This document shows, in pieces, positions 3,477 to 64,000 of a stretch of 64,000 nucleotides of DNA; positions within the stretch are counted from its first letter, which is position 1; each line of letters starts with the position of its first letter. The stretch is from Euprymna scolopes (lineage: Eukaryota): NCBI GenBank assembly GCA_053919585.1, contig CM132787.1. One strand, given 5' to 3'. The notes below the pieces were generated by a model that saw nothing but the letters and a program-made list of their open reading frames with translations, did no database searches and had not been told where the DNA came from. The translations under genes and the position numbers were made by a program.

Positions 3477-3629
3477 ATGCTTACATTAAAACTTTGTTTA
3501 GATATAATGAAAATAAAATTTTGGTTTAGATACTTATTATAATAATTAATATCTTGAAAAATTTGTTATCTACTTTTTCTCTTTCTCTTCAGAAGCTGTT
3601 GGTTGTGCAGTTGCCTCTACAAAATAAAA

Positions 3630-3738
3630 ATGTTTTTTTACCGTTGGATTAGTAATTCATGTAGAGTCTACACTCGTCCAATCATTTTCCTGCTAATTTT
3701 TGCTTTGATTGCCAACTTTACTACATTAATCTATAATT
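3630..3738 (+). CDS. First coding exon of HtrL/YibB-like gene: MFFYRWISNSCRVYTRPIIFLLIFALIANFTTLIYN (type II signal anchor)
   Basis: Polypyrimidine acceptor tttttctctttctcttcAG ending at 3592, ATG at 3630, 36 open codons with a basic tail then a hydrophobic stretch, phase-1 donor GTAAGT at 3739. Missing from the ORF track because it is short. Confidence 0.65.
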
Positions 3739-6311
3739 GTAAGTTGTCTATTTTTTTTTTTTAACTTTTATTTTTCTTCTCTGCTTTTTTCTTTTTTAAT
3801 CTATCATATATTGGCTTAGCAATTCAGTTCCGACAGCTTTTAAATTTAAAATCTTTCATAATTTAAAATAAACTAATTTAGCAATAACATACTCTCCATT
3901 GTTTACAAATTCTTACAAACGTTCAACAAGCTTTGCAGTACCTCATTGATGCAACAAAAAAAAAGCAAAATGGTGTTTAAAAAAATTCATTTTTATTAAT
4001 TATTTGACATTTAATTTTAAGGATCTGAAATTAAAAATTAAATTAAATCTAAAAGAAAGATTACAAAATGAATCTAAAATAGAATTTTCAAAAAAAGAGA
4101 AAACAGACTCGGAAGTTAAAAAAGAAAAACAGGAACTTAGTTGCAAACCCAATAAAAGTCGTGCATGTTTCTCGCTACTGCTACTGAAAATTCTTACAAA
4201 CCTTACATCAATGGATTTTATACAACCCTGAGCTGTTTATGATTAAAAAAGTCTATACTGTAACGTCCATTATATTAGTGTACTAGGGAGGAGGGTCAGA
4301 AAAATACTTTTTGTTAATGCATGTAGTTGTTCAAAAACATTAAAACTAGATCAATTGAAATTCTAGAGAAAATTGTAATGATTGCAAAACTTGCCTCACA
4401 AATGTCCATGTGTCAGTACATCTTGTAAACTGCTTAAAAATAGAAAAAGATAAACAAAATTGCAACTCCCAGTTAAACTTGCAAACTAACACAAATTCTT
4501 GCCGATAATATTCAGATGAGATGCTGCCATTTTGAATAAAAAGCCTGTTTTTCAGAGATTGAGTCCATTTGGATTTTGAAGAAGTAAGCTGTGACAGCAG
4601 TGTGTTGGATTGAATCCTGGACATTTAGTTGAAAGTGCAGAATAAATAACAATCTGTTTAAAAAAGAACAGAATAGTTAACAATTAATAATTTAACTACA
4701 TCAAACATTCAGCTGCTGATGACTTTTCTTTTTTCCTCATATTGAATAAGTTGAGAGAAAATGAGGCAGTGGGTGATGTTAAAACGTATTGTGACCGAAG
4801 ATGTTGAGAAAGAGAGATGGGAGGACTAAAAGGTGTTACATATACTTTTATCTTTTCAATGGCAATGCCAGTTATTCTTGCTATTATTCAAGAAATTTTT
4901 TTCAGACATGTTTTTCTATACAATAATCGAATTCTAGAAATTGAGGAATATGGTCTATGGTGATGCTACATATATGAAATAGAACTGCATACAATATGGA
5001 TGATGTTAACAGCCTGAAACTTTTACTTTAGTAAGAACTTCTATGCAGTCACTAAATAAACATCAACAGTGCTAACTTCCTCTTTGATATAAGTTATGAT
5101 AAGTAAAGCCATTCAAAATTTATTTTCAGTTAAAATTGATAAGAAATATGCATATAGATAATGTTCTATGCTGGTTTTTGTTGCTGTGAGGCTGTTTTAC
5201 TATTTAACTTTTACTTTCTAAAACTTATTTCAAGATAGATGTATATAAATTTAAATAGTCTCCCCAACTTCATCTCACATACTGAAACTAGTTGCTTACC
5301 CCAGTAGGATATTTCTAAACGGTCGTAAAAAAGGACTTAACTTGAAATAAACACACCGAAGAAAACAAGAATCTTTTATCATTTTTGGTTTAGAGGAATT
5401 TCATGGTATTTGCATGAATAGCCATTATAGAAAAAAAATGGAATCATTACTTGCATCATTTTTTTTCCTCCCCGTATTAGTGCACATATGAAAAATTCCA
5501 AAATCTGATAAAATCACAATGAAGACTTCATTTCTGAGCAAATCTGGTGTCATTTTTGGTTTCTTTTGGGTAAAAAAAAATTACTAGAGTGAATTTTCAG
5601 AAAATATTCAAGAAAATATAATTATTAAAATGTCGCCTGGGTGAATTTGTGTGCAATTTATGCAAAACGAAAATGCTTAAAATCTGAAACTGGTTAGTTA
5701 CATGCTCAGATATTCAGAATTTCTTGGTCTTGAAGATGTCCATCGGTGGTGCAAGTTAGAACAAAATCTGGGATATGAGTGTCAAACCTCGGATAATGAC
5801 ATGGAATTACCCAATAGCAATATACCATAATCTCCAAGGAAAATTATCTTAATGATAGGTTAAACAAAATTCTAGGTATATAATCCTTTAAATATGAAAG
5901 TTTGATTTTCTAAATAGATACTGTCATGGATTACATGTTGAATTGCACAGAAAGATGTGAAGCCACAAATTCACTCCAGCTATAAGTAAAATGGCAATTT
6001 ATTACATGCAATGAATTGTTTGTGTTATTTTGGAATTAAATTATCCAAAAAGGATATACCATAAAATACATTAACCAAAAATGCTCTAAAATACAATCTG
6101 TCTTTAAAAAATTACAATAGGATAGTATGTCATCAGCTGTGTCTGCTGATGAGTTTTCTTTTCTTCAGGTTTTTGACGTTATTAGTGGTAGGGTTCATCA
6201 GCTGAAGAATGTATACTTGTATAAAATGAACAAACGGAAACTTTTTTTTATATAAAAATAGAATTCTTTTATTTTAGTACTTAAGGAGCATTTTAAGAAC
6301 TCTAGAGTTGA

Positions 6312-8315
6312 ATGGCACACAAATGGTTTACTTTTACTTGTGCAGCTGCCATTGCTCAAAGGCAGCATGCGTACTGCAGATTCAACCGACATACAAAGAG
6401 ACAGAAGTATAGAGAAGTTAGATGTAATTGTAAAAGAGAAATAGCGACAGCTAAGACAGAATACACTGAAACCACCAGAAAACGTATCGAAGTACAGAAA
6501 TTAGCGACCTATGATTTTTGGAAAATCTACAATAGTGTAGTAAATAATGGACAGTCAACGATTCCCCTACTATCAGACAATCATGAAGTTGCTTGCACGG
6601 CAACTGAGAAGGCTAACCTACTTGCCAGTCGGTTTGCCTCAAACTCCACATTGGACCCGGCACACCACTCCCTCCCCAACTTTCCTTTGTGGACAGACAC
6701 CACACTAGATGATTTGAATATCACCCCTTCTCAAGTACATGGTATCATAAAATACCTAGACACCTCAAAAGCATGTGGACCCGGTTTCATCCTGGCTGTG
6801 CTATTTAAAAAATGCTCCACTGAGGTTGCTCCAGTTCTCTCCAAACTTTTAAACAAATGCCTTAACGAATCTTGTTTTCCTGACTGCTGGAAAACCGCTT
6901 TGTTTTCAAGAATTCTGGTGAAAGTACTGACCCATTAAATTATCACCCCATTAGCCTTCTCTCGCTATTCACCAAATTAGTTGAGTCCTTAACTAATCAA
7001 ACTCTAGTCCATCACCTTACAGCTGCTAAACTCCTGACTAACAATCAATATGGATTTAGGCAAGCCCGTTCTACAGCAGATATCCTAACTGTTATCTCTG
7101 AACGTATATACCATTTACTAGACAAAACAGGTGAGGGTAGAACGATAACCCTCAATATATCTAAGGCTTTTGACAGGGTATGGCACGATGGTCTTCTAAG
7201 GAAAATTAGATCATATGTTATCACTGGAAGAATACATAATGTAATTAAATCCTTAAGTAAGAGAAAAATCCAGGTTGTTTTCGACAGTTGTACATCTAAA
7301 CAATATGATATAAATGCAGGAGTATCTAAGGAGTCTATCCTTGGCTCTTTATTATTCCTGATATTCATAAATGACCTCCCTGATAAAATTGTTTCGGAGA
7401 TGGGTATATTTGCTGATGACATCACTCTCTATAACATGCACGAGAGGAAAACAAATTAACACATATCTAAAGAAATGGCAGAAACACTAGAGGATGACTT
7501 TAAATCTGTAGTAGAATAGGGACAAAAATGGATGGTCACATTCAATGCTGCCAAGACTAAGCTTGTTTCCTTCAATAATTACAAGAAACCTTCTCTGCCA
7601 CAAATAGCAATGGCCAAAAACACATTACCCGAAAGTACTTCCTTTAAACTCCTTGGCCCAATGTTTACAGGGAACATGAACTGGAATATACATTTAGAGC
7701 ATTGCCAAGGCTGCTGCGAAGAAGGTGGGCTCTCTCTCTTCTACCATGCTAGAAAACTACTTACGCCTGAAAGTATCCTGTACCTCTATAAGGCCACCAT
7801 TCGCCCATTTATGGAGTACTATTGTCACATTTCGGCTGGTGCATCTGCTACTTGTATCTCACTCCTGGAGAGGGTTCAAAAAATAGTCGCCAACCTGATA
7901 GGTCCTGAAATGTCATCTAGGCTTCACCATTGACGAAATGTTGCATCCTTCTGCAACATTTCTACAAGTATTTTAATGGTGAATGCTCTGACGAACCACA
8001 AGTACTTGTATGCCCTCAACATGAATACCCCAGATAAGCAGCTAAATCCCACCCCTTCACAGTAGAGTTCCCTAGGTGTAAAAAGGCCTTCTACTCCAAT
8101 AGTTTCTTCCCCAGAACTGCTAGACTTTGGAACTCCCTTCTAGGATTCTGCTTTCCCAACTGTACTGATATGCAAGAGTTCAAGTGTAATGTGAACAAAC
8201 ATGTTGCTACTCATCTCCCTTCATAATACCCCTGTAACTTATGTCCCCAATAGTAGCTCCCTGTTTGAAAGTGGCACTGTCTTGTTTGGGGTGAAAACTG
8301 AACAAAAAAAAAAAA
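6312..8315 (+). mobile_element. CR1-group LINE, family B, 5'-truncated decayed ORF2
   Basis: RT motifs QYGFR, FADD, LYKATIRPFMEY; 3' tail gtggcactgtcttgtttggggtgaaaa plus poly(A), shared with the copies at 54-56 kb and 58.6-61.5 kb. Confidence 0.9.
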
Positions 8316-9269
8316 TTTATAAAAGAACACAGCTATTCATGGTGAGTCACATTTCCAAAACTGAATTATAATTTTTCCCTTGTGGCAAAACACAAAAGAA
8401 AGAGAGATGCATATTAAAACCAAAGAGACTGAAATGTTTATTTTTCGAATCCTGTTGTCGGCCAAGTAGGTTTGACCTTTTGCACCTGTGTACTTTAATC
8501 ACTTTGACATGACTGAGATTTTATAAACATTTGCCAAGCTGAGCTGATGTGTGCTGATATGAAAACAGCATTGACTTAACTTTATTTATCTCCCTCTAAG
8601 GACAATGAAATACCAATAGAGGGTTTTTAAATGTGGGGAGGTTGAGCAAAAGAATGCTTATATTTGTAACTAATTAACTAATCATTATTATACTAACTTT
8701 TAAAACTATTTATTTGATCAGGCTGGAATATTGTATAGTAGTTACTGTCATCAAAGAACACCAGATCTATACATCAAATCAGAAGTTGAAATTCAGTTAA
8801 AATTCCAATCTTAAATGAACTTTTCAATATTAAGATCTTATAAGATGCAGGACCTCACTGGCTACAATATGGGCTAAGTAGTTGTTCTCTACAAAGAACA
8901 GCACTAAAATTCACACTAAAAGTGTAACATTCACCTTTTCCATAATTTTGACTTTGACCTTCATAGTCCAAAATTAAGTGGGTTCTAAGTTAGAACATGA
9001 TCTATATTTTGACCAAGTTTGGCGATTATTAGTCAAGTGATGTGGACACTGGGCTGTATACAAACTTGACCGAAAACATGATCTCCTTAGCATAAATAAT
9101 TATAAAAATGGAAGAAGGTAACTGGCATGAATAATTAAAAGGAAGAGATGAGTTATAACACTGAACTAATTTTTTACCTGATGAGTTAACAGTATATACT
9201 TTTTGTGTTTCTTTGCTTTAAGTTTATTCGTTTCCAAGGGTTAGCAGTACACAAGACACAAAAGAAATC

Positions 9270-9602
9270 CGTTACAATATTTGTTGTATAATGGAGTATG
9301 ATTCCGCACAGTCGGGAGATTCTATTTATAAACGATGTTGCTAGGAACCAACAAATCGAATTAATTCACGTTCTGCTACGAACCAATCAGAAACCAGAAT
9401 TGCTCCATAAATATTAAACCTTTCTGTGGAGTCCAATTCGAGAACTGTCTACTGCAAACTAGTCAACTGCTGGAACTTGTGGAGAACAACGAACCATCGG
9501 AAACTGTTCTGTCTACTGCAAACCAGTCACCTCTCAGGACTTGTATTGAACTACGAACCATCGGAAACTGTTCTGAAACTAAACATGGCTTACACTTCTA
9601 GA
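9270..9602 (+). mobile_element. Solo LTR of the copia family found at 36.3-41.5 kb
   Basis: Aligns to the reverse complement of 36349-36640 and 41150-41452; flanked by GAAATC at 9264-9269 and 9603-9608. Confidence 0.85.
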
Positions 9603-11450
9603 GAAATCCATGCAAATGTTTATCCTTGGCCTTTGTTAGTTTTTCATTGATATACAAAACAAAAACAGAATGCACTTCTATCATTAATCCAATACTATCT
9701 TGGAATTTCTAAATATTTAATATGTAATAAATACTAAACCAATAGATTATCTAGCTTGCCCATGTTGTTGTGTGTTTGGTTTTTGCAATTCATTCTGATG
9801 TAATGTTATTGACGTTCCTCCATCCCTGGGCGTTAGGAAGTGGGTAAAAATGGAGAAAAAATATTAAAAAAAAGAGGTAGTTTATCAGCAAAACAGTAGA
9901 TAGAACATTGTTTATAAAGGAACACAAAAGAAAGCTAAAGTGGTTGTTGATCAGGGTGTGGTGGTAAGAGAAACAAGAGATCAGTCAGTATATTTTAGAG
10001 TTGATTTTAGGAGTAGCGATGGGTTTGATGACAGTTTTACAACAGTTATAGACAATCTTGAATTTGCGATAATTGACAAGTTAGTTAAGAACCTTATCCA
10101 GTTGGACACAGTTGAAGGCAAATGTCTTTGAAGGAATGCCGAATACCAAGTTCATTTTATATAAACTTTATTCGCAACTTCCCATCGGAGCTACAAGTGC
10201 GTCATAAGTTCTACATCATGCTATGGTTGTATCTCTCTCGGCTTCTAAATGCAGAGACGATATCTTCTGTGCTAACTTATCTAACTCTCCTACTCTGACT
10301 CTCCTACTCTGACTAAACTGTACATGTCTCAAAATCTATCTTCCTTTCATTACATCATTAATAAACGTAGCATTAAGATCACCTGATGTTTTTACATAAT
10401 TTATAATGTTTATCTAGAAATTCATAAATTTGATAATTTCCAAAGTTATCGTAAATAAACACTTCATCCTAAAACACCTATTTTAGCTGACATAACATTT
10501 AAACTAACGAAACACAATAATAATAATCAACTAGTTTACTCTCTGGCGTTGCCCCAGAACCAACAAAAAAAACAGCAGATTGCAGCTTGTACCAGATCAA
10601 GAGAACTTTAGGAGATTGAAATGAGCTGACACAACTGACAACCACAACCTCAGTGGAACGTAAATGTGGACCTTAGCATTCAGAGGGTTGATAGTGTCAA
10701 CTAGTATTTATGTTTTTGTTTTATTTTGATTTTATACTTGTGAGCTAATGTGTGATAGACAACAACATGACCAGAACAGGAAGAGAACATGAAGGAGAAG
10801 ACCAGACACAACGTGGGGGTCAGCATTTGTTGTCGAACAGGAGAGTGCACTCATACAAGCTTTTTCTTACCCTTCACTGTTTTGATTCTTTTTAACTCTA
10901 ATGATTTCTTTCTCCACATATCAATCTACTTCACATTCTTAATTTATAACTGCATTTTTTTTTTAAACAAAAACTACTTTTATGACCTACAATTTTGAAA
11001 CAAATATAAAGCTAATCTTGGCTTATATCTCTAATGGTTTCTTTTAACATTCCTTAATTATAATTTTCCCCATTCTCAGTTGGCAAATATTGGGTAACTT
11101 ACACCACAAATTTCCCTAGATTTTATTTTCCAAATTTGTAATTTCAAGTTTTATTTTCATCATCACTATCACATAGTTATTTGTCAACCCTGCTAGAAAG
11201 GAAAAATTAATAAAAAAAAAATGTTTTAAGTGGATCGTTATTTAAAAAAATATATATTTACTTATTGCTTGGAATGTCTAAAAATTTAATAATCTATGTA
11301 CTAAATACTGATCCAACAGGTTATCTGATTGGTTATAAAAAAAACAACTGAAAAAATAATAATCCTTTCTATGGACAAAAGATGCTGTCTTTATTTGGCT
11401 TGGTTTTGGAATTCATATCCGAAGAACTATTTTTTAGAAACTAAATTCTG

Positions 11451-11521
<71 letters not shown>

Positions 11522-13319
11522 TCCACATACAGTACTGTTTTGCTCTTTCACATATCATATAATATATATATATATATATATAAAATTTAGTTTCTAAAAA
11601 ATAGTTCTTTGGATATGATTTCCAAAATTAAGCCGAATAACGGCAGCATCTTTTGTCCATATATATATGTAATCATCCACATAGAGTACTGTTTCGCTGT
11701 TTCACATATCATATAATATACATATATATATGTATGTATATATATATATATATATATATCTTAATGTAAAAGGAAAAGAGAAAGTTCAATTCCACAAAGA
11801 AGACTTATCCGGATAATGCCAAGCTCAACAATAATTATTAGAACTTTAGCTTATTGAGCTTCCTCGCCATCCATAAAATGCAACAATATCCATCACTAAC
11901 CGTTTTCCCTAGTATTGGACTATTGGACAACATCCCAAACCAAATTTTTTTTTTAACCACCCATAAGCACTCGCGATCTGAAAAAAATCACCATAAAAAA
12001 CTTCAACTCTTTAATATAAAATATTAGCACACCCTCTGAACACCCAACCATTACATAACTTTAAATAAATTACCAACCTAGAATCGCCTGCATCTTGGCA
12101 ATACCTAATTAACAATATATCTGCTTTAAACATAAGCCCACAAACAACTTTGCCTAACAAACCCTATCCCCGTAAATATGTACACTAAACACCACCTGTT
12201 AAATTGCAACCAAACCACCAACTAGCACACGATGCAACGAGAATATAACCTAAACAATATAAAACCTAGGCCCAATTGAAAATATAGCTTAGAAACCACT
12301 TTCCAGAGCTAAAGACTTAAAACCTAAATTTACAACCATCTAACTACCACCCCTAAACCCCACTGACGAGCCCCCCCCCAATAAGAAATTATTTAAAAAT
12401 CAGTGCATTTGGTCTCCACTATTAGATTTACACTAAGCCCTCCACCAGTAGTATTTACCTTAAAACTTTTAAATGTACCGAAAATATAACCTAAGAAAAG
12501 CTCCCTTGATTCAACCCAACCCACCTCCGTCACTCATACAGACATATCCCAATCCCTATCCTACCCCCTCCGACTACCAGCTAAGCACGTTCCCAACCGC
12601 TTACAAGCAAACACGTGTATTTTTCAATTTCCTTCTAGATGCTACTTCCTACTGATAACTTAGATTTGAACACAGTCCAGTTTCGGGTAATTTCCATCAC
12701 AAGAGTCTCCGTTGAAAAAATAGTTTTTTTTGCCATCCAGATTAGGAGGAATAAGATTTCACCAGACCAACACATCTACGAAAGACCACCCTAACAAAAC
12801 ATTTAGAGAAATATGGAGCTTTAAAGGACAGCTATAAACTATGCTTCTTGTATCTCTTGGAGATTAGAACTACTACATTAAGTAGTTATGCCGATTCAAT
12901 GGACCTATCCCTCGTGTTCATAAACGAGAAAGTATGTATTCAATTTTCTAGGCCTGGCTTGTTCATAAAACATAAATGTTATGGCCTTTATAATCGAACT
13001 TCAAGAAATTTAAAGTTTTAAGGTGGAATCTTGAAACTACTGTTCCCAGTGAAGCAATCTTTTAATTTAATTTAAACCAAAGGTTCACCGAACTCTTACG
13101 CTTTCCCAGCTTATTCTAGATCTATATATATATATATATATATATATAATCTGTGTTTTTTATCTGTGTTTGTATATATGTATATATATATATTCTCTTT
13201 ATTTTTCTTTATTTTGTACAGGACCACTTACCCCTCACGCCTCAACCTCATTTCCTGCTATTCTGACCCCCCCGCCACTTGTCTGTATCCCTTTCTTTTA
13301 CGCACCCCTTTGTTGGAGG

Positions 13320-13740
13320 TAGTAGTGGAAGTATTGTTACTACTATCTTTATTATTATCATTATTATTACTGCATTGTTTTTTAGCGCTATTACTATTGT
13401 TATTATTATTGTTTTTATCATTATTATTATAATCATCATTATAATTGATGTTATTATTATTATCCCCGTTATTGTCCCCGTCATTGCTACCATAACCGCC
13501 ACCATTTTCTCCATTTTCACTGTTATTAACAGTAATTTTGAATTTACTTCTATCACAACTATTGGTAATATTATCTTTAATGTTTATTTTTAATGCTTAC
13601 CTTTAATTTTGTCTTTATTTCATCTTTATTTTTATCTTCAATTTTACTTCTATTTTATTTTCAGCTTTATTATGACTACTATTATTATAATTTTCATTAC
13701 TATTATCTTTCATATTATTATAATTACCCTACTATTATTT
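13320..13740. repeat. (ATT)n-rich low-complexity tract
   Basis: Degenerate ATT/TAT repeats that produce the poly-Ile and poly-Leu pseudo-ORFs. Confidence 0.85.
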
Positions 13741-14287
13741 GGTATATTTTACCACTCTCATAAGTAGTAATGGTTTCCTTACTCCTCCACTTTGACATTA
13801 ATATGTATACTTAACCTTTTACATCAAGTTAAACGCACTCATAGTCATTGCCACACTAATCTCCAACCGCCCCCTTATGATCATACTCCCTATATCATAA
13901 CAGTAGAAACTTATAAATATATTGCTGCATATTACCTTTCAGTTTTACACACACACCCTCCCAAATTATAAGCGAATTTATAGCTGCCATTTGCTGTTTA
14001 GGTGGCACCAATCAAAATTACCCACTCCATAGAAAATAGACACCCCACAAACTGTTAAAATAAATTACCACGCAGCAACAATACACCCCCTATTTAACCA
14101 TAATACATATACCCCTGAATCTCAATACTATGTTAAAGATCATATATAATCTTATATATCATACTATATATAACAAGCTTCTGCTTGTTTATTTAGAATT
14201 CAATAAAGCTTCCTCTTAATCTCTTTTGTCCCTAATGAACCTTATGCTAGACGCCGCATCTTCCCCATGCTACCTAACACCTTCTCT

Positions 14288-14337
14288 ACTCTTCTGATGA
14301 GAAGCATTAGGCTTCAAAATGCCCTGGTATAAAGAGT
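14288..14337 (+). ncRNA. Type I hammerhead ribozyme fold with G12A change
   Basis: actctt-CTGATGA-gaagc(attag)gcttc-aAAA-tgcc(ct)ggta-TA-aagagt; stems I, II and III all pair. Confidence 0.75.
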
Positions 14338-14535
14338 CCCTTCTATCCCCCAAATTTTGCCTGTATTCCATTATTAAATAAATGATCCATTCTATATGTA
14401 CCAATATATAGTTTTGTGTCCTCATTTCATACTCTTGTTGTCCTATTATATATATAACATAAAATTTAGTTTCTAAAAAATAGTTCTTCGGATATGAATT
14501 CCAAAACTAAGCTGAGTAAAGACAACATCATTTCT

Positions 14536-14578
<43 letters not shown>

Positions 14579-14607
14579 CATAAATATATATATGTATATA
14601 TATATTA

Positions 14608-14732: not shown

Positions 14733-14750
14733 ATATATATATATAAGGCA

Positions 14751-16429: not shown

Positions 16430-16454
16430 TAATAATATAATTGATATTAATATT

Positions 16455-45298: not shown

Positions 45299-45353
<55 letters not shown>

Positions 45354-54040: not shown

Positions 54041-54084
54041 AATAAAGAAAAATATGTTTTATGTACATACCTATGACAAACCAA

Positions 54085-56045
54085 AAATATATCATATCAG
54101 CATAGATATAGCACTCTCCCTCGATACTAGCACACAAGTACATGTATTTGGTGACTTCAATGTCCACCATAGTAACTGGCTTGGATTCTCTACTTACACA
54201 GACGTAGCTGGTAATACAACACATAGCTTCTCTATATCTCATTCCCTATCTCAGACAGTTACATTTCAGACATGTTTCCCAGACCAGCAAGATCAATATG
54301 CCTCACTTCTATTTCTGACAACAGTTCCCGATGATTTTACAATAAATGCCCACAACCCACTCTGGAATGCTGGTCACGCTGTGATAATGGTAGAAATCAC
54401 CCTAAATTCTCGCCCTAAAACTGAAGACACACTAATCAAAACAATGAGGTATTACAAAAAGGGTGACTGGGAAGCCATCAGGGAGCTCATCAGAGATGTC
54501 CCATGGCAAAATATCTTTTCTCTTCCAGCGGAACAGTGTGCAAATGAGACCCCTGAATCGTTCAAAACTGCAATTGAAGCACATGTTCCCACACGGAAAT
54601 TCTATAGCAAGCCCCACTCTTCCCAATGGTTTACTTCTGCTTGTGTAGCTTCCATTGCTCAAAGGCAGCATGCGTTCCACAGATTCAACCAACATAAGTC
54701 CAGTTCAAACAGACAAAAGTATATAGAAGCCAGAAGAAATTGTAAGAGAGTAATAGCGACAGCTAAGACAGATTACACTGAAACTACCAGAAAATGCATC
54801 AAAGCACAGAAATTAGGAATCCGTGATTTTTGGAAAATCTACAACAGCGTAGTAAATAATGGGCAGTCAACGATTCCCCCACTATCAAACAATCATGAGA
54901 TTGCTTGCACGGCAACCGACAAGGCTAATCTGCTTGCCAGTCGGTTTGTCTCAAACTCCACACTGGACCCAGCACACCACTCCCTCCTTGACTTTCCTTT
55001 GCGGATAGACGTCACATTAGACAATTTGAAAATCACCCCTTCTTAGATAATGGTATCATAAAAAACCTAAACACCTCAAAAGCATGTGGACCCGATCTCA
55101 TCCCGGCTGTGCTATTAAAAAAAATGCTCTGCTGAGGTTGCTCCAGTTCTCTCCAAACTTTACAATAAATGGCTTAACGAATATCTTGCTTTCCCGACTG
55201 CTGGAAAACCGCTTCTGTGGTACCAGTCTTCAAGTATTCTGGTGAAAGAACTGACCCATTAAATTATCGTCCCATTAGCGTCCTCCCGCTTTTCGCCAAA
55301 ATATTTGAGTCCTTAATTAATCAAGCCCTAGTCCAACACCTAACTGCTGCTAAACTCCTGATTGACAAACAATATGGATTTAGGTAAGTCCGTTCAACAG
55401 CAGATATCTTAACTGTAATCTTTGAATGTATATACCGTTCACTGGACAAAACAGGGGAGGGTAGAGCGGTAGCCCTCGATATATTTGTACCTTTATATGG
55501 CCACCATTCGCCCATATATGGAGTGCTGTTGTCACATTTGGGCTGGTACATCTGCTGCTTGTCTCTCACTCCTGGACAGGGTTCAAAAGAGAGTCACCAA
55601 CCTGATAGGTCCTGAACTGTCATTTAGGCTTCAGCCTCTGTCCCACCAATGAAATTTGGGATCCCTCTGCCTGTTCTACAAATACTTTAATGGTGAATGC
55701 TCTGACGAACTACAAGCACTTATACCTCCCCGGCGTGACTACCCCCGACAAACCCAACAAGCAACTAAGTCCCACCCTTTTACAGTAGAGATCCCTAGGT
55801 GTAAGAAAGCCTTTTCCTCCAATAGTTTCTTCCCCAGAACTGCAAAACTTTGGAACTTCCTTCCGGGATTCTGTTTTCCCAACTGTACTGATATGCAGAA
55901 GTTCAAGTGTAATGTGAACAAACATCTTCCTACTCATCTCCCTCCCTTCATAATGCTCCTGCAACTTATGTCCCCGATAGTAGCCCCCTACTTCAAAGTG
56001 GCACTGTGCCTTGTTTGGGGTGAAAATTGAATTTAAAAAAATAAA
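54085..56045 (+). mobile_element. CR1-group family B LINE (APE to 3' tail) with an internal RT deletion near 55485
   Basis: VFGDFNVHH, QYGFR; jumps from ALDI straight to LYLY; family B tail. Confidence 0.9.
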
Positions 56046-56485
56046 AAATATTCCAAAATCAAATAAATTGATCAAGTAAATTTATTTTTATAACGAAAAT
56101 CATTTTTAAGCGAATTTTAGTTTTTCCAATGTCTCCCATGTTAAGAATGGCTTTCTAAAATTTTGCAAGTTAGAATTATTTGGAGTTCTCTTCCTTGGTC
56201 CTTCAGTCTGTTTTTTATGATGGCATCGTGATATCATTGATGTTCGTTTGAACAATTTACCTGACTTTTGGTGTACAATATTTTCTTTCTATCATGGATA
56301 CGTACATCGTACAGATTTTTCTTTATTTTGTTGTATTTTAATATGGGGGGATTTTGGACAAGCACCCACAATTCTGCTCAATCACCATCGTCATTACCAA
56401 TCATCAGTATTGTCTCACCATTCATTTGACACTCAGTTAACTCTCATTGTCAAGTGACATTTTAGTAAAATAAATAAATAAATAA

Positions 56486-57022
56486 CAGGGCTCTACATTT
56501 CAAGTGAAACAGTCGCATTCGTGAGTGATTTTTCAAAGTGGTGACTAGAAATAATGAAACACTTATCTTTTAGCAATTGTATTTCTTTCCCTGACAATCT
56601 TTCAAAGCTCACTACTGAGTGAAAAATATGTTTTCAACCTTTTTTTTTTAATAAAACGAACAAAGTTAAATTATTTAAATAATAAAAGTTTAATAGAACA
56701 ATATACTATATTATATATCTATTATTTATCCTTTTTTTTCTTTTTATTTTTTTAACGAAGTCTGTTTAAAAAGAAATATCTGAAGAAATTCGAATGTTTA
56801 TACCTTCAAGTATCAACATAAAATTTGTTGTCTATTTAGAATTACACTTATTAAAAAAAAATACAGAAAAATCTTTATGATGTTCATACTCGTCACAGAA
56901 CAAAGATGTCATATTCTAAAAATCATATCGGTTTGGCTTGTAACTTTTCTATTTGGCTAGTAAATGAAAATATTTAGTTGTCAAAGGTGTCAACTAAAGA
57001 TAAATTTGTCCGTAGAGGCCTG
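56486..57022. mobile_element. hAT-like MITE in (AATA)n
   Basis: TIR cagggctctac / gtagaggcctg. Confidence 0.5.
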
Positions 57023-57199
57023 AATGAATAAATAAATATTGTCCAAGCTTTTCTGTATGGCAGTCATATTTTATGCTGAAGTTAGGAATAACCTTTTCAT
57101 CACAAAAAGCTTAAATTTAATGCACATATCTTTAGAATATTTGCTTCTATTTTATGATCTAGTATCGCCCTGGGCCATAAAAGCTAAATAGAAAATGCT

Positions 57200-57231
<32 letters not shown>

Positions 57232-57685
57232 TGTGATGAGTGAAAAAAACCTTTAGAGGCCCTATAAGCACTACTGGAAGTACAAAATAAAATTAAAGAT
57301 GCCTCCAGAGCACAACTTCTCTCTACCTTTCTTTGTAGAAAAATGACAATAGTTAAGAAATGATAAATTAAATCCGAAGTTAGGATCTTCAATTTGAAAA
57401 AATTCTGGCTCATTTTCTGGACTCTATTAATGCATGATAACATTAACGCTCCTGTTTAATCTATATAATTATAAAACTCTGTGAACCGTTCAACTGCCCT
57501 TGAATGCATTTTGTCTATTAAAAATATTGTTGTCATGGAAACCAGTTTGTATTTAATAAAATCCACACTCCTTTCCGCAGTCAAACCATAATAAGTACAA
57601 ATAAACTTCAGTTTTTGCTTAACTCATAGACATGAATGTTTTGGTTTCAGTTTTGATTCTAGCTGATCGCACTCAAATTATTATT

Positions 57686-57719
<34 letters not shown>

Positions 57720-58619
57720 GAAATTGTGACTATATATTGTGTACAATATAATATGAAATTAGCAGTACCCTCTAACCGGTGTTGCCCGATGGAAGCGTGC
57801 TCCACCCCAAATTAAAGTATGGTTGTTGTTGCTGCTGCCCAACCCCCAACCTTCTCATGTTACGAATGGTTTTCACAATAGACACCCCCTACTCCTCATG
57901 GTACGAACAGCTATTGGAAGTGATACCCCCACCTCCCCTTGTCAAGAACTGGTGGAGAGACGTGGTATAAGATTATTGAGCAACCCCCAGCCGTAAAAAA
58001 AAGAAGAAAATAGCAGCAAGAAGGGGAAGGGGTTAGACGCACTAGGCAGCCCAGTTGAGAAAAAGGTGACAACAAAAAGTAGCAGGCAGGGATGCAGACA
58101 GGCTCAAACTTTTTAAGCAAAGGAAGAAAAGAAGGTGGAAAAAAAAAGCCATCCATTTAGCCGTCATGGCCACGGTGTCTTACGACATCGTGGGCAGGCG
58201 AAATAAGATTACTCATCACAAGGCATATGATGACTTTGGAGAGGGATCGAGCAAGAGAGAGAGAAGAGAGTCTGTAAGTTTGACAGACTAAATTCGTTGT
58301 TTTCAAAAAAGAATAAAAGAAAATACTTTATTAGACAGTTTTAAATATGAAATTAAAAAAAGAAAATGTAACTCATATTTTTGTTGTTACATAGTTTTTA
58401 ATGCTTTTTAGTTGATCCAAAAAAAAATAAATAAATAAATAAAGTTATCACGAGCGGTTCACAGAAACATTTTTATGTTTTCCTTCTCATTTGTTTGGTT
58501 GTTAGGGGTGGGTGGTAGAGGTTAATCAACTCTAGAACGTGCATAGTTTAATAGGTTCCTTTGCTGTTTAATTAACCGTTGTTCCATAGGTAACACACTG
58601 ACATTTACCGGGGGGGGGG

Positions 58620-61495
58620 TATTACATTTTCACACCAAACAAGGCACATTGCCACTTTGGTGTAGGGGGCTACTATCAGGGGCAACAACTATTGGGGCAC
58701 TATGTAGGGATTTGGGCAGCAAGATGTCGGTTACCGTTACGCTTGAACTTCTGCACGTCAGTACAGTTATGGAAGAAGGGACCTGGAATGGCTTTCCAAA
58801 TTCTAGCGGTTCTGAGAAACAAACTATTGGAGTAGAAAGATCTTTTACATCTAGGGATCTCTACTGTGTGAGGATGGGATTTAGCTTCCTGTCGGGTTTG
58901 TCGAGGGTGTTTACGTCGTGGGGGCACAAGTGCTTGCAGTTCGTCAGAGCATTCACCATTAAAATACTTGTAGAACAGGCAGAGGGATGCAACATTTTGT
59001 CGATGGGACAGAGGCTGAAGCTTAGATGCCAGTTCAGGGCCTATCAGATTGGCGGCTCTCTTTTGAACCTTGTCTAGGAGCGAGAGACTAGTAGATGCAC
59101 CAGCCCAAATACGACAGCAATACTCCATACACAGGCGAATGGTGGCCTTATAGAGGTATAGGATACTTTCGGGTGTTAGTAGTTTTCTAGCACGGTAGAG
59201 AGAGCCTACCTTCTTTGCAGCGGTCCTGGCAATGCTTTCAATGTAATTGTTCCAACTCATGTTTCCTGTGAACATTAGGCCAAGGAGCTTGAAAGATGTA
59301 CTCTCAGATAAAGAGTTGTTGGCCATTGCTATAGGTTATAGAGGAAGTTTCTTGTAGTTATTGAAGGAAACTAGTTTAGTCTTGGCGGCATTGAATGTGA
59401 CCATCCATTTTTGTCCCCATTCCACTACAGATTGGAGGTCATCCTATAGTATTTCTGCCATTTCTTTTGATATGTGTTCCTGTCATGCCTGTTATAGAGT
59501 GTGGTGTCATCAGCATATATACCCATCTCAGAGGCAGTTTTGTCAGGAAGATCTTTTATGAATATTAGGAACAATAGAGGTCCAAGAATAGATCCTTGGG
59601 GCACTCCCGCATTTATATCATATTGTTTAAATGTACGACTGTCGAGGACAATCTGGATTTTTCTCTTATCTAAGAAGGATTTAATTATGTTAAGTATTCT
59701 ACCAGTGATACCATATGATCTAATTTTCCTGAGGAGACCCTCATGCCATACCCTGTCAAAAGCCTTAGATATATCTAGAGCTACTGATCTGCCCTCCCCT
59801 TGTCCAGTGAATATTATATACGTTCAGAGATTACAGTTTGGATGTCTGCTGTGGAACGGGCTTGTCTAAATCCATACTGTTGGTCAGTCAGAAGTTTAGC
59901 ATCTGTAAAGTGATGGACTAGAGCATGGTTATTTAAGAATTATTGAATACTGGTACCACAGAAGCAGTTTTCAATCAGCCCGGAAAGCAAGATTCATTAA
60001 GTCATTTGTTGTAGAGTTTGGAGAGAACTGAAGCTACTTTGGCTGAGCACTTTTTTAATAGCACAGCTGGGATGAGATCGGGCCCCCATGCTTTTGAAGT
60101 ATCAAGGTTTTTTATGATAGCATGCACCTGAGTAGGGGTGATTTTCAGATCGTCTAGCGTGGCGTCTGTCTGCATAGGAAAGTCAGGTAGGGGATGGTTG
60201 GAAGGGTCCAGTGTGGACTTTGAGGCAAACCGACTGGCAAGCATGTTAGCCTTCTCAGTTGCTGAGCAAACAACCTCAGGATTGTTGGTTAGTGGGGGGA
60301 ATTGTTGATTGCCCATTATTTACTACACTGTTGTAGATTTTCCAGAAGTCACGAGTGCCTAATTTTTGTGCTTCGATGCATTTTTTAGTGGTTTCCGTAA
60401 ATTCTCTCTTAGCTGTCGCTATTTCTTTCTTAACGTTACTACTAGCTTCTATATGGTTCTGTTTGAACTGGACTTATGTCGGTTAAATCTGCGGTATGCA
60501 TGCTGCCTTTGAGCAATGGCAGTTGCACAAGTCGAAGTAAACCATTGGGGAGAGTGGGGTTTGCTATAAAATTTCCGCATGGAAACGTGCTTCAATTGCA
60601 GTTTTGAACCATTCAGTGGTCTCATTTGCACACTGTTCAGCAGGAAGAGAAAAAATATTTCCCCATGGGACATCTCAAATAAGATCTCTGATGGCTTCCC
60701 AGTCAGCCTTTTTATAATATCTCGTTGTTTTGAGCACTGGCTCTTCAGTTTTGGCTCTAGAGTTTAGGGCGATTTCAACCATTACCACTGCATGATCGGC
60801 GTTCCCAAGTGGGCTGTCGGCATTCGTTATACAATCATTGGGAGCTGTGGTCAGAAACAGATCTAGAAGTGATGCATGTTGTTCTTGCTGGTCAGGGAAA
60901 CGGGTTGGAAATGTAACCATTTGTGATAGGGAGTGAGATATAGAGAAGCTATGTGTTCTGCTGCCCGCTGCGTCTGTGTGAGTAGAGAATCCAAGCCAGT
61001 TTTTGTGGTGAACATTAAAGTCACCAAATACATGTACTTGTGCGCTAGTGTTGAGGGAGAGTGCTGTGTCTATGCTGTCAGAGACTTTGTTTATTATGGT
61101 GCAGTCCTGGGTCGAGGGAGAGCAGTAGAGAAAATAAAAGTAGCTAATGTTGTGTTGCATGTGAAGTCTAAAGCACATAAAGGCTTGATTGTCCGATTCT
61201 AGGTTTGTTTCTCTAGTCAAGGGAAGGGTATTACGAATGTGAACTCCAAGTCCGTACATATGTCTGTCAGTCCTTACGGTAGAGTGGGAGATATCCAGGC
61301 ATGTTAAAGTAGTTAGAGGGGATGGAGGAGTGTAGGTTAGTCTCACTTAGTGCTAAGATATCCAGGGTATTTTTTAGGAAAAATGCTTCAACATCAGCTA
61401 AATTAATTCTAAGCCCACCGATGTTCGTGAATGCAAGCCTCAAGGGAGGAGGCAAGTTGGATTTGTTTGACCCTAACATATAAAAAAAATTCCGT
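58620..61495 (-). mobile_element. CR1-group family B LINE covering nearly the whole decayed APE-RT ORF
   Basis: AFTNIGGLR, LALSET, GDFNVHH, GNADH, GVPQGSILGP, then the 3' tail; possible degenerate TSD atttacnngggg at ~58603 and ~61496. Confidence 0.9.
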
Positions 61496-63988
61496 ATTTA
61501 CATGGGGAGGGGGGCAGCGTGGATAAAAAAGAAAAACAATTGAAGCTGTGGTAATGTTGATTGATTACTTACCGGCGTCCACAACTAAAAATAGTTTTCT
61601 CAAAGTTGTATTAAGAAACAGAAATTTATTTAAGAACGAAAACATGAAATCCTATCCTGAGGAAATGAAACGAAACTTCTTGTTTTTTTTGTTTTTTTAA
61701 TTACTGCAATAGTCAGTGTCAATTATTTCACTTTTCACCACAACAAAAAAATATAGTAGAAAAATAATTTGTCAAAAAAAAAAAATTAGGTGCATGCAAA
61801 ATAACGAAAAATAACAAATCACCGTTTTGGTTAGTTCTGTCAAGAGAAGCCAACAAAAAAAAAAAAAAGTGAAAAAGGCAAGATAAGTTACTCTTCTACC
61901 TACCTGGATAATTTTTGTGTTTTAATGTATTTTAAAGCTTTTATTTGGTACAACAATGGCCACCACATATAACATTTATAACAGAAAATTTAAATGCGAT
62001 ATTCGTTTTCAGCAATGGCAAAAATCTTTAAAAGTCATCATATTAAAGGAAAATGTTAAGGTGGAAACCAAGTAAGATTTTATAACTATCATCAACTATT
62101 CTTGTCTGTTGGTTGGTTTTGTGTTGGCCTACTACAATTACCAAATACCCCCCTTCATCAAAATTACCAGTCCCCCCTCAAAAAATGTGGCCATAAATTG
62201 GGGGCTCATTTTACATTAAATTAATATAGAAAAGTGTTTCACCACATTTTGTAACAATAAATTTATTATAAAAACAATTTTAAATAAATTTTAAATAAAT
62301 TTATCATATCTTAGAAACTATTTGTTTCTTGTAGTTTTAAATGTTGTTGTTTTCAGCACTCCTGTAAACCTAAAATAGTAATTTCAAAGACTGCACCTTT
62401 ACCTAAAAAAATGAAACAAAAATAAACAAATGAAAATAAACCTAAAAAAAAAACAAATAAAAAGGAAACACAAAACAAACCAAGTTTCTTCATTTCATTT
62501 TGATAATAACAAAAACAAATAAAACTGAAAAAAAGAAAAGAAAAATTGTTTCGTTTCATTTTGACAATAAAAAAATGAGAAAAATGTGGAAAAAAAATAC
62601 AAAATGGTATCCGTATTTATTGCAAGGCGTATGATGACTTTAGAGAGAGAGAGATAGGGAGAGAGAGAAAGAGAGGGAGTATGTGAGTTGTGACAGTCTA
62701 AATTTGTTGTTTTCAATAAAGAAAAAAAGGAAACGTGTAATCGGACATTTATAAATATGGGAGTTTCCCCAAAAGTAAAGAAATGTGGATCATAGTTTTT
62801 TGTGTTGTTGCGTAATATTTAAGCCTTTTGAGTAAAGTTGAGTAAAAAAGAAAGTTTTCATGAGCGGTTCACAGAAACATTTCTGTTTTCTTTTTATTTT
62901 TGTTGGGGGGAAGTAGGGCTTCAACATTTCACATAAATTCTATGTTTACATTTTAGTTGGGATACATGATCTGTATAAAAATCTAGATTTGTGGATGCTT
63001 CTCTATCAGTAAGTGAAGACAATAATTTATAGTTTTTGAAGTGTTCGTTTAACACCGGGATTACTTTCATTCTGGAATAGGAGAATGGCACATATCAGCC
63101 AATCAGAAGCCACAGAACATATCTGGGGAGACCTTCAAGGAATGGAAGCTGAATGCTGTCTGAGTTTACGCATCAGTTATGAAGTGTGGGGTCTCAATAC
63201 AAGTAGTCTGTGTATAAATTCACGCGGTGTAGAATGGAAATATGGGACTCCTTCCTCTGTAGGTTATTTTGATGATGATGACGTCACTCCTAGGATTTAA
63301 TCTAAGATTTTATTATAACAAATAAATGTATCTAAAATGTTGTTTTACAGTTACATAAGATAGTGACTGATACTGTAGACATAATAAATTTTTATGTGGC
63401 TTCTGTTGTTGTAAACCTACGGTATTTTGGTTCAGAAGGGAATTTCTCAATGAAATTATTATATATAGGATAATTCACTCTATAATAATAAATATGAAAT
63501 CTGCATAAATTAAAATATATTTAAGCGTATTTTACAGCCAAGCCACCAGACACCCCTGCTTGTTCTTGATAAAATTCTTTTGTGTTTGTAAGAATCATAT
63601 TGTTGATTATAAGAATTAGCAAGAATACTTTGTATAAGCATGAAACTATTAACAATAGAAAAATTGAAAACTTTACAAGAACAATATTTTTGTTAATGTT
63701 GCTTCCATCTTGCTGCATTCTGTCCGTTCAGTTCAGGGGAGACAATTTTTTTAGTTATTTTTCTTTATTTCCGCTTATAACACATTCAATGAAAAAAAAA
63801 GTCATTTGACCTTCGAAGAATTTTTTTTTCTAAATTTTAGATATTTTACTGGTGTTGCACTGATTAAAAGTATGCCGACTTTGTCGGGTTTGTTGTGTAT
63901 CTTAGAAGTTTTAGCTGGTTATGCAAACATACAAACACACAGACAACTGCATTTTATATAATGACTTTGTTTTATTTTCTTTTTGCAG

Positions 63989-64000
63989 ATACGAAATTGA
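63989..64000 (+). CDS. Start of the putative fourth coding exon (R-YEI...), continuing beyond the window
   Basis: Strong acceptor tttgttttattttctttttgcAG ending at 63988. The phase-2 junction AG|A gives Arg and the frame stays open, but only 12 nt are visible. Confidence 0.5.
   Translation: MRN

What the first reader, a model, noticed from the sequence alone, without database searches (positions are those of the whole stretch)
3593..64000. Hidden spliced gene spanning the window: a bacterial HtrL/YibB-type domain with Golgi-enzyme-like type II topology
Seen: four exons with canonical splice sites join in frame (intron phases 1, 0, 2). They give a short basic tail, a hydrophobic anchor, a Pro-rich stem, N-glycosylation sequons (NGT, NIT) and the domain TLVTAYFD...WIDIGYFR. 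Known: HtrL/YibB is mainly a bacterial protein linked to surface-polysaccharide loci, with poorly characterised homologues in some invertebrates. Inference: an animal secretory-pathway glycosyltransferase-like enzyme of unknown activity, possibly from an ancient horizontal transfer that later gained introns and a signal anchor.
Basis: partly seen in the sequence, partly recalled or inferred. Interest (0 to 1): 0.8.

Follow-up and report, generated by a model that had tools for sequence, protein, structure and literature searches.

The report
Spliced cephalopod HtrL-like glycosyltransferase gene
The window holds most of a real, expressed, intron-rich animal gene for a membrane-anchored enzyme-like protein related to the bacterial HtrL/YibB family; it belongs to a large but unstudied invertebrate family, and its proposed bacterial origin is not shown.

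Summary
Exons 3593-3738 (ATG at 3630), 18753-18862, 48668-49134 and 63989-64000+ join in frame, with intron phases 1, 0 and 2. All three junctions occur as exact 40-mers in assembled transcripts from independent public runs.

The full protein has 357 aa. It has a basic tail, one membrane segment (residues 17-35), a Pro-rich stem and an HtrL_YibB domain (Pfam E 2.6e-17). The confident model (pLDDT 91) matches E. coli HtrL best, then retaining GT-A glycosyltransferases (GT8, GT24, GT6, GT34; Z 10-12). dN/dS against a related species is 0.12.

The gene is the orthologue of Octopus sinensis LOC115220341. It belongs to a family seen in molluscs, annelids, nemerteans, cnidarians and a nematode. Databases list this family but nobody has characterised it.

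Most likely it is a type II secretory-pathway glycosyltransferase of unknown specificity. That activity is inferred, not shown.

The horizontal-transfer idea is unresolved:
- All 27 sampled animal proteins form one clade on a long branch. They are not nested among the 36 bacterial and 3 phage proteins.
- The best bacterial identity is 22-26%.
- Any transfer would predate the cnidarian-bilaterian split.

This is a new member of a known kind, of modest interest.

The parts
3593..3738 (+). Exon 1 of the window, the second exon of the transcript. 5'UTR 3593-3629; CDS 3630-3738 encodes residues 1-36 plus one base of codon 37. The donor GT follows 3738 (phase 1).
   Evidence: L001 and L002 align from 3593 and carry the exact 3738/18753 junction. 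There is an in-frame TGA 29 codons upstream of Met1 with no ATG between.
3678..3734 (+). Codes for the single membrane segment, residues 17-35 (signal anchor).
   Evidence: Kyte-Doolittle 19-residue mean is 2.2. The next best value elsewhere in the protein is 1.03. The N-terminal flank has 3 K/R and no D/E. The model shows a helix over residues 2-39.
3739..18752 (+). Intron 1 (15.0 kb, GT..AG). It contains a 26-bp x 50 tandem array at 16455-17757.
18753..18862 (+). Exon 2 (110 nt), residues 37-73. It covers the end of the anchor and the Pro-rich stem, and includes Met46.
18863..48667 (+). Intron 2 (29.8 kb, phase 0). It holds a LINE (26759-31176), a Copia-type RT piece (37907-38386, minus strand), a 5S rRNA-like element and a tRNA-like element.
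48668..49134 (+). Exon 3 (467 nt), residues 74-228 plus two bases of codon 229. This is the N-terminal half of the HtrL_YibB domain.
   Evidence: Pfam PF09612, E 8.7e-16, profile positions 2-150 of 267. RNA-run contigs cover exactly this span.
48692..48721 (+). Two N-glycosylation sequons: N82-G-T (48692-48700) and N89-I-T (48713-48721), just before and at the first strand of the domain.
49112..49120 (+). W222-I223-D224. D224 is invariant in 100 animal homologues and also in the bacterial and phage members. It sits at the end of a central strand, where GT-A enzymes carry DXD.
   Evidence: Strand 217-223 is seen in the model. The match to the DXD position is inferred, not aligned residue by residue.
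49135..63988 (+). Intron 3 (14.9 kb, phase 2, inside the codon of R229). It contains a 28-bp x 10 array directly after the donor, a 53-bp x 21 array and LINE fragments.
   Evidence: The same position and phase occur in the Octopus vulgaris homologue.
63989..64000 (+). First 12 nt of the next exon (residues 229-232). The remaining 385 coding nt lie beyond the window, probably in this same exon.
   Evidence: Junction 40-mer in L001-L003. The loose ends behind 49134 in three runs read the exon 4 letters. The octopus homologue has a 367-nt last exon from the same intron.

Best explanation
The window carries four of at least five exons of an expressed cephalopod gene, spread over more than 60 kb with retroelement-filled introns. 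It encodes a 357-residue type II membrane protein with these parts:
- a 16-residue basic cytoplasmic tail;
- one signal-anchor helix (residues 17-35);
- a flexible Pro-rich stem of about 50 residues;
- a 270-residue luminal domain of the HtrL/YibB family with a GT-A nucleotide-sugar-transferase fold.

The most likely function is a Golgi or secretory-pathway glycosyltransferase. It would add a sugar from a nucleotide sugar to a glycan acceptor. It would use the invariant K202, the W222-x-D224-x-G226 loop (in the place of DXD) and the D310-Q311 pair. These residues are shared with the bacterial enzymes of LPS and capsule loci.

Shown here: gene structure, splicing, expression, purifying selection, family membership, fold and topology signals.

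Inferred: enzymatic activity, the retaining mechanism, Golgi location, and the donor and acceptor.
For: Gene model and expression:
- Exact junctions are present in transcripts.
- Stranded polyA reads fall on exon 3 only, in the direction expected for a + strand RNA.
- dN/dS is 0.116 overall and 0.085 in the domain, against the orthologue of a related species at 73% identity.

Family and fold:
- Pfam HtrL_YibB scores 63.8 bits against a cut-off of 24.1 over residues 89-318.
- The AlphaFold model has pLDDT 91.3 and pTM 0.87.
- The best Swiss-Prot fold match is E. coli HtrL (E 6.6e-17, TM 0.60/0.74). Next come GT6, GT8 and GT34 enzymes.
- VIA-align gives Z 10-12 over about 200 residues to LARGE1, UGGT, ABO/alpha3GalT and XXT1.
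- The motif residues are invariant from E. coli and phage to animals.

Topology:
- There is a single hydrophobic segment with a positive N-terminal flank.
- 44 of 72 homologues with at least 40 residues upstream of the domain have the same kind of segment.

Link to glycan synthesis:
- Bacterial homologues from several phyla lie beside GT1/4, GT2, Wzx, Caps_synth and deacetylase genes. E. coli htrL lies beside the waa cluster.
- Viral homologues are fused to GT2, methyltransferase and sulfotransferase domains.
Against: - No member of the HtrL/YibB family has a demonstrated activity in the literature I could search.
- The canonical DXD is absent: the motif is W-I-D, with one acidic residue.
- No sequence-level link to GT8 was found (hhalign probability 1.6%), and there is no solved relative.
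- Fold TM-scores to solved GT-A enzymes are only 0.35-0.5.
- Cysteines are not conserved in pairs, so there is no disulfide signature of a luminal domain.
- The only named animal relative, C. elegans HTRL-1, was discussed as a secreted defence-type protein, not as an enzyme (PMC8989417).
- One transcript contig (L003) skips the exon with Met1 and the anchor.
Confidence: 0.75

Rival explanations
1. Origin rival A. The animal family descends from a bacterial or viral HtrL gene transferred into an early animal. It later gained the exons for the anchor and stem, and then introns.
For: - The Pfam family is dominated by bacteria and viruses.
- Bacterial and phage proteins are domain-only, 262-312 aa, without the N-terminal 85 residues.
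- The whole catalytic domain is one exon in Gigantopelta, and the Lineus gene is intronless.
- The cephalopod, Gigantopelta and Helobdella introns mostly differ in position. The anchor and stem sit on separate small exons.
- No vertebrate or arthropod appeared among the named hits.
Against: - The animals are not nested in any sampled bacterial or phage clade. They form one side of a branch of about 2.8 substitutions per site.
- The best bacterial identity is 22-26%. A scan of 185,579 prokaryotic species genomes with the animal motif found nothing.
- The family occurs in Cnidaria, Nematoda and Lophotrochozoa, so any transfer is older than their split.
- Fold relatives occur in entries I recognise only from memory of the accessions as fungal, protist, nematode and tardigrade.
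- The tree has no root, so the direction cannot be read.
Confidence: 0.3
2. Origin rival B. The family is old in eukaryotes, or at least in animals. It was inherited vertically with lineage-specific duplications and lost in several lineages, including vertebrates and insects.
For: - There is a single animal clade (SH-aLRT 100).
- The internal groups follow taxonomy: cephalopods 96, cnidarians 97, Soboliphyme 98.
- There are two cephalopod paralogue clades. This window's gene is sister to the octopod orthologues, and all three of its introns are shared with them.
- HtrL-like folds occur in entries that look like other eukaryotes. C. elegans HTRL-1 carries PF09612 (PMC8989417).
Against: - The non-animal eukaryotic members were seen only as fold matches with hidden organism names. 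They were not placed in a tree.
- Many independent losses are needed.
- The Soboliphyme assembly could carry contaminant sequence (not checked).
Confidence: 0.5
3. Function rival. The protein is not a glycosyltransferase. It is either a secreted or membrane-bound binding or defence protein that has kept the fold, or a transferase of another group such as a phosphosugar or a non-sugar substituent.
For: - HtrL/YibB has no known activity.
- C. elegans HTRL-1 was grouped with antimicrobial-type genes of the pharynx (PMC8989417).
- A peptide matching a Candidula HtrL_YibB protein was reported in snail mucus (PMC11206429). This hints that some members are secreted.
- The DXD motif is incomplete.
Against: - K202 and D224 are invariant, and D310/Q311 nearly so, across bacteria, phages and 100 animal proteins.
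- dN/dS in the domain is 0.085. This fits a conserved active site better than a mere scaffold.
- The fusions and gene neighbourhoods are all glycan-building.
Confidence: 0.2
4. Artefact rival. The HtrL-like exon is bacterial or viral contamination, a pseudogene, or exons of different genes joined by chance.
For: None found. The only oddity is contig L003, which lacks exon 1.
Against: - Spliced transcripts from several runs join all the exons.
- The introns hold animal LINE and Copia elements.
- The ORF is intact and under purifying selection.
- Octopod orthologues share the three intron positions.
Confidence: 0.01

Closest known systems
Octopus sinensis LOC115220341 and Argonauta hians LOC106879582 (uncharacterised proteins, P0001 and P0152)
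   Same: They are orthologues by tree: sister clade with support 99-100. They are 55-60% identical across the domain. They have the same architecture of tail, anchor, stem and HtrL domain. The O. vulgaris copy has the same three intron positions and phases.
   Different: The stem region is not alignable. This window's species has no public protein record for the gene in the collections searched, only Logan transcript ORFs. None of these proteins has been studied.
E. coli HtrL/YibB (P25666; Pfam PF09612, TIGR02192)
   Same: It has the same Pfam family and the same predicted fold (TM 0.60/0.74). It shares the invariant residues: the VTAYFD-G start, K, W-x-D-x-G, D-Q and W-F.
   Different: It is only 23-24% identical. 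The window protein scores 74 bits against the 265-bit equivalog cut-off, so it is not a YibB orthologue. The bacterial protein has no anchor or stem and is cytoplasmic. The animal clade has characteristic deletions after DIG and before P-N-T, and has S/N-T-D-Q-Q in place of D-D-D-Q.
Retaining GT-A glycosyltransferases with type II topology (GT8 LARGE1/GXYLT/XXYLT1, GT6 ABO/alpha3GalT, GT34 XXT1/MNN10, GT24 UGGT)
   Same: The overall GT-A fold matches (Z 10-12, about 200 aligned residues). The architecture is that of a Golgi enzyme. There is an acidic residue after the central strand. There is a D-Q pair late in the domain, and E. coli GT8 enzymes WaaJ/WaaO also have an invariant P-D-Q-D; whether the two D-Q pairs are equivalent is not tested.
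   Different: There is no detectable sequence relationship (hhalign probability 1.6%; no PDB sequence hit). The motif is W-I-D instead of D-x-D. TM-scores are below 0.5.
C. elegans HTRL-1 (T11F9.12), PMC8989417
   Same: It is an animal protein annotated with PF09612 and is predicted to be secreted or on the secretory pathway.
   Different: It has 736 aa and was described as nematode-specific and saposin-related. It was not compared here by sequence. The paper's statement that the domain occurs outside nematodes only in bacteria is contradicted.

Membership tests
Pfam HtrL_YibB (PF09612) | Profile score above the curated gathering threshold over most of the domain | tested here: met
   63.8 bits against 24.1, residues 89-318 on profile positions 2-245 of 267. 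Exon 3 alone scores 58.7 bits.
Pfam HtrL_YibB (PF09612) | Family-wide invariant residues shared with the bacterial founders | tested here: met
   The A-x-F..G start, Y, N, R, P, K202, W222-x-D224-x-G226, G, D310-Q311 and W-F are invariant in a 15-sequence alignment of E. coli, phage and animal proteins. They are 92-100% conserved in 100 animal proteins.
Pfam HtrL_YibB (PF09612) | Same fold as E. coli HtrL | tested here: met
   Foldseek against Swiss-Prot models: P25666 ranks first, E 6.6e-17, TM 0.60/0.74. Both structures are predictions.
YibB equivalog (TIGR02192 / NF008462) | Score above the NCBIfam equivalog cut-off | tested here: not met
   74.2 bits against 264.9, and 49.8 against 342. 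It is a distant family member, not a YibB orthologue.
GT-A fold glycosyltransferases | Single Rossmann-like alpha/beta/alpha domain superposable on solved GT-A enzymes | tested here: met
   Z 10.3-11.9 with 182-206 aligned residues to LARGE1, UGGT, ABO, alpha3GalT, BoGT6a and XXT1. Foldseek gives E 1e-6 to 1e-5.
GT-A fold glycosyltransferases | DXD (or variant) metal/nucleotide-binding motif after the central strand | tested here: inconclusive
   The motif is W-I-D, and only D224 is invariant. It follows strand 217-223. No residue-level superposition was available.
GT-A fold glycosyltransferases | Nucleotide-sugar-dependent transfer activity | not testable with these tools
   No biochemical data for any HtrL/YibB member were found in the library.
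CAZy GT8 / GT6 (sequence families) | Detectable sequence homology to family members | tested here: not met
   hhalign of the 100-sequence profile against E. coli WaaJ/WaaO gave probability 1.6%. A profile search of all PDB sequences gave no hit at E up to 10. GT6 was tested only through this PDB search.
Type II (signal-anchor) Golgi enzyme architecture | Short basic N-terminal tail, one N-terminal membrane helix, no other membrane segment | tested here: met
   The tail has 16 residues with 3 K/R and no D/E. The hydropathy mean is 2.2 for residues 17-35 and at most 1.03 elsewhere. The model has a helix over residues 2-39.
Type II (signal-anchor) Golgi enzyme architecture | Flexible stem between the anchor and the catalytic domain, and sequons on the luminal side | tested here: met
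   pLDDT is 60-83 for residues 41-80 and 94-99 in the domain. The stem is Pro-rich. Sequons lie at N82, N89 and N354.
Type II (signal-anchor) Golgi enzyme architecture | Golgi localisation | not testable with these tools
   This needs a tagged protein in cells.
Horizontally acquired gene of bacterial or viral origin | Recipient sequences nested within a donor clade in a supported tree | tested here: not met
   27 animal proteins form one side of one branch (SH-aLRT 100). The 36 bacterial and 3 phage proteins lie on the other side. The tree is unrooted, and other eukaryotes and giant viruses were not sampled.
Horizontally acquired gene of bacterial or viral origin | Patchy distribution in the recipient group and an intron-poor ancestral state | tested here: inconclusive
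   The family is present in Mollusca, Annelida, Nemertea, Cnidaria and Nematoda. No vertebrate or arthropod was among the named hits. The domain is a single exon in Gigantopelta and Lineus. Absence elsewhere was not tested directly.

The most novel reading that the evidence does not exclude
The animal HtrL-like clade may be a still unclassified family of Golgi glycosyltransferases. It has about a thousand catalogued members, mostly molluscan, and has been present since before the cnidarian-bilaterian split. It would share one origin with bacterial LPS/capsule enzymes and with the glycan machinery of phages and giant viruses. It would make a glycan linkage typical of marine invertebrates and missing in vertebrates. 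This window's gene would be one cephalopod member, with an alternative transcript that drops the membrane anchor.
Probability: 0.45. Interest if true: 0.55.

Novelty: new member of a known kind. Interest (0 to 1): 0.35.

Why it matters
The gene itself is an ordinary orthologue of proteins that genome annotations already list as 'uncharacterized, HtrL_YibB domain'.

Its value lies in what the family shows:
- A GT-A fold family with no known activity in any organism is conserved under strong purifying selection in many invertebrate phyla.
- In animals it carries the full signal-anchor and stem architecture of Golgi enzymes.
- It shares its invariant residues with enzymes of bacterial surface-polysaccharide loci and viral glycan modules.

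Finding its donor and acceptor would fill a gap both in invertebrate glycobiology and in the function of E. coli HtrL.

The work also corrects a published statement that the domain occurs outside nematodes only in bacteria (PMC8989417).

Tried and rejected
1. Profile search of all PDB sequences with the 100-sequence alignment found no hit at E up to 10.
2. hhalign of the family profile against E. coli GT8 enzymes WaaJ/WaaO gave probability 1.6%, so no sequence link was found.
3. The search for related loci on prokaryotic genomes failed twice. The 100-sequence alignment gave no usable pattern. The animal motif L-M-S-T-D-Q-Q-I-I-Y gave 26 pattern matches, none a relative.
4. tblastn against plasmids found no match. 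Against phages it found only 7 weak matches at 21-29% identity.
5. Looking up Octopus sinensis P0001 for its genomic locus failed; it is not on record. O. vulgaris P0151 was used instead. Its annotated model looks partly wrong: it has an extra N-terminal 98 residues and lacks part of the domain.
6. The search for conserved cysteine pairs as a luminal signature found only C197 widely conserved.
7. The literature search found no paper on activity or on transfer into animals. The HGT compendium's supplements are not held.
8. Contamination and pseudogene readings were rejected.
9. The 5' UTR exon was searched for in the window and is not there.

Full report
OBSERVATION

- Exon 1 runs 3593-3738, with an AG before it, an ATG at 3630 and a GT after it.
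- Exon 2 runs 18753-18862.
- Exon 3 runs 48668-49134.
- A fourth exon starts at 63989 and runs off the window.

Joined, they give an open frame with intron phases 1, 0 and 2. The window has no N runs.

SPLICING AND EXPRESSION

A search with exon 3 against 1.8 billion representative proteins gave 483 hits. One follow-up hit, P0153, is 100% identical to the model from residue 46 onward.

P0153 is encoded on three short Logan transcript contigs from different runs, L001-L003.
- L001 and L002 align to the window in three blocks that end exactly at the proposed splice sites.
- They contain exact 40-mers across 3738/18753, 18862/48668 and 49134/63989. L003 contains the last two.
- Compared with the spliced model, L001 differs at two bases and L002 at one.

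The single read-laying run gave independent support.
- Contigs of three further runs cover 48667-49134 and nothing of the flanking intron apart from short repeat pieces.
- Their loose ends behind 49134 read the first letters of exon 4.
- The few raw polyA reads on exon 3 all have the first mate on the minus strand, as expected for a + strand RNA in a stranded library.

The transcripts add two things.
- A 5' non-coding exon of at least 112 nt is not in the window.
- Met1 is preceded by an in-frame TGA with no ATG between.

The full protein has 357 residues (reference L002:136-1206:+).

L003 joins the 5' exon directly to exon 2 and skips exon 1. In that form the first usable in-frame ATG is Met46, and the anchor is missing. 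This is one contig from one run, so I treat it as a lead only.

THE PROTEIN

Family and structure:
- Pfam places residues 89-318 in HtrL_YibB at 63.8 bits, against a cut-off of 24.1.
- NCBIfam's YibB equivalog models match far below their cut-offs. It is therefore a distant family member, not a YibB orthologue.
- With a 100-sequence alignment, AlphaFold gives a confident model: pLDDT 91.3, pTM 0.87. It has a long N-terminal helix (2-39), a low-confidence stretch (residues 41-80) and a compact alpha/beta domain.

Topology:
- Hydropathy shows one membrane-class segment at residues 17-35 (mean 2.2) and nothing above 1.03 elsewhere.
- The N-terminal flank has three basic residues and no acidic ones. 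This is the charge pattern of a type II signal anchor.
- Sequons lie at N82, N89 and N354 on the predicted luminal side.
- Of 72 homologues that start with Met and have at least 40 residues before the domain, 44 have such a segment. Many of the others come from bacterial-style gene calls on transcript contigs and may be truncated.

Fold comparison:
- The best match among reviewed proteins is E. coli HtrL (E 6.6e-17, TM 0.60/0.74). After it come GT6, GT8 and GT34 enzymes, many of which also align over their own N-terminal anchors.
- Among solved structures the matches are retaining GT-A enzymes: LARGE1, UGGT, ABO, alpha3GalT, BoGT6a and XXT1. Z is 10-12 over about 200 residues.
- There is no sequence-level link to solved structures or to E. 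coli GT8 enzymes.

Conserved residues:
- An alignment of E. coli HtrL, phage proteins and animal proteins shows a shared invariant set. It includes K202, W222-x-D224-x-G226 and D310-Q311.
- In 100 animal proteins K202 and D224 are 100% conserved, and D310/Q311 are 92-94% conserved.
- D224 follows the central strand 217-223, where GT-A enzymes carry DXD. Here only one acidic residue is present.

Selection: against the orthologue of a related species (P0154, 73% identity), dN/dS is 0.116. It is 0.085 in the domain and 0.25 in the N-terminal part. dS is about 1.3 and so near saturation.

WHAT THE FAMILY DOES ELSEWHERE

- E. coli htrL sits next to rfaD-waaFCL.
- In five bacterial loci from different phyla, the genes next to the homologue encode GT1/4, GT2, a Wzx-type flippase, a capsule synthesis protein and a polysaccharide deacetylase.
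- Viral members are fused to GT2, methyltransferase, sulfotransferase and capsule-synthesis domains.
- I found no biochemical characterisation of any member.

Glycan synthesis is therefore the best-supported role. It rests on fold, context and conservation, not on an assay.

RELATIVES AND ORIGIN

Named animal homologues:
- Cephalopods: several Octopus species (two paralogue groups) and Argonauta.
- Other molluscs: Haliotis (many copies), Gigantopelta, Patella, Candidula, Magallana, Ostrea, Argopecten, Mytilus and Mercenaria.
- Annelids: Helobdella, Capitella and Owenia.
- Nemerteans: Lineus and Tubulanus.
- Cnidarians: Nematostella and Exaiptasia.
- A nematode: Soboliphyme.

The ESM Atlas cluster nearest to the protein has 994 members, all eukaryotic and mostly molluscan. 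A coral genome paper lists the domain among lineage-distinguishing domains (PMC6214176). A C. elegans protein with PF09612 was named HTRL-1 (PMC8989417).

Trees:
- In a 33-row tree, the window's protein and P0154 are sister to Octopus sinensis LOC115220341 plus Argonauta (support 100/99).
- A second cephalopod paralogue clade lies next to them.
- This placement suggests that the window comes from a non-octopod cephalopod. That is an inference.

Introns:
- All three introns of the window gene recur at the same or adjacent alignment columns, with the same phases, in the O. vulgaris homologue.
- Gigantopelta has a phase 1 intron at the end of the anchor and a phase 0 intron in the stem, and then one 927-nt exon for the whole domain.
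- Lineus is intronless.
- Helobdella has three introns at other positions.

Test of the transfer idea:
- I added 36 bacterial representatives from a scan of prokaryotic species genomes and three phage proteins.
- In the 66-row tree the 27 animal proteins form one side of a single branch (SH-aLRT 100, about 2.8 substitutions per site). Taxonomically sensible subgroups lie inside. The phage proteins fall among the bacteria.
- The best bacterial identity to the window protein is 22-26%, and the best viral identity is 31%.
- Fold clusters of AlphaFold DB also hold look-alikes. Their accessions I recognise, from memory only, as nematode, tardigrade, fungal, protist and giant-virus entries. The organism column was blank.

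The tree is unrooted and lacks these other eukaryotes. The data therefore show a single, old origin of the animal family, before the cnidarian-bilaterian split. They do not show where it came from. They fit an old eukaryotic gene with later intron gain equally well.

VERDICT

- The structural and functional reading (a type II, GT-A-like, HtrL-family protein) is well supported, but the activity is untested.
- The transfer hypothesis remains open and is, if anything, less likely than vertical descent with losses.
- The gene is a new member of a known but unstudied family, so interest is modest.
- The scan's earlier notes on this window concern other elements in the introns and do not bear on this gene.

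Noticed in passing
L003:1-207 (transcript contig); window exon 1 at 3593-3738 is skipped: One Logan contig joins the upstream 5' UTR exon directly to exon 2 and leaves out the exon with Met1 and the membrane anchor. The ORF then starts at Met46, after three upstream ATGs. It could be a minor anchor-less isoform or an assembly path artefact.
   Followed up: partly
window 26759-31176 (+): A nearly full-length LINE lies in intron 2. It has a 411-aa ORF without a Pfam match, then an endonuclease ORF (27991-29367) and an RT/RNase H ORF (29383-31176) in separate frames. Further RT/EN fragments lie at 424-1320 (+), 54009-55046 (+) and 60675-61346 (-). A Copia-type RVT_2 piece lies at 37907-38386 (-).
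   Followed up: partly
window 16455-17757: An AT-rich tandem array of a 26-bp unit, about 50 copies at 91% match, lies in intron 1. GC is 0.19 in that 2-kb bin.
   Followed up: no
window 49144-49425 and 50512-51628: Two tandem arrays lie in intron 3. A 28-bp unit x 10 starts ten bases after the exon 3 donor site. A 53-bp unit x 21 at 98% match follows further on.
   Followed up: no
window 23187-23303 (+) and 41698-41769 (+): Rfam finds a full-length 5S rRNA match (48.7 bits, gathering 38) and a borderline tRNA match (29.1 bits, gathering 29). Both lie inside intron 2 and may be pseudogenes or SINE heads.
   Followed up: no
window 48020-48050 and 48224-48255: Two short stretches of about 30 nt in intron 2 are matched by very abundant contigs and reads in the RNA runs (word depth up to about 1150). 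These run on into unrelated sequence on both sides, so they are probably pieces of a highly expressed repeat or of another transcript family.
   Followed up: no
The Rfam scan of the whole window at gathering thresholds reported no family there.
   Followed up: partly
L090 (Octopus vulgaris OX597828.1, gene of P0151): The annotated O. vulgaris protein seems mis-modelled. Its first 98 residues do not align with any homologue, and about 65 residues of the domain are missing between two small exons. The O. sinensis orthologue is complete.
   Followed up: partly
PMC8989417 (C. elegans HTRL-1): The paper states that the PF09612 domain is found outside nematodes only in the bacterial protein HtrL. 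The searches here show hundreds of members in molluscs, annelids, nemerteans and cnidarians.
   Followed up: yes
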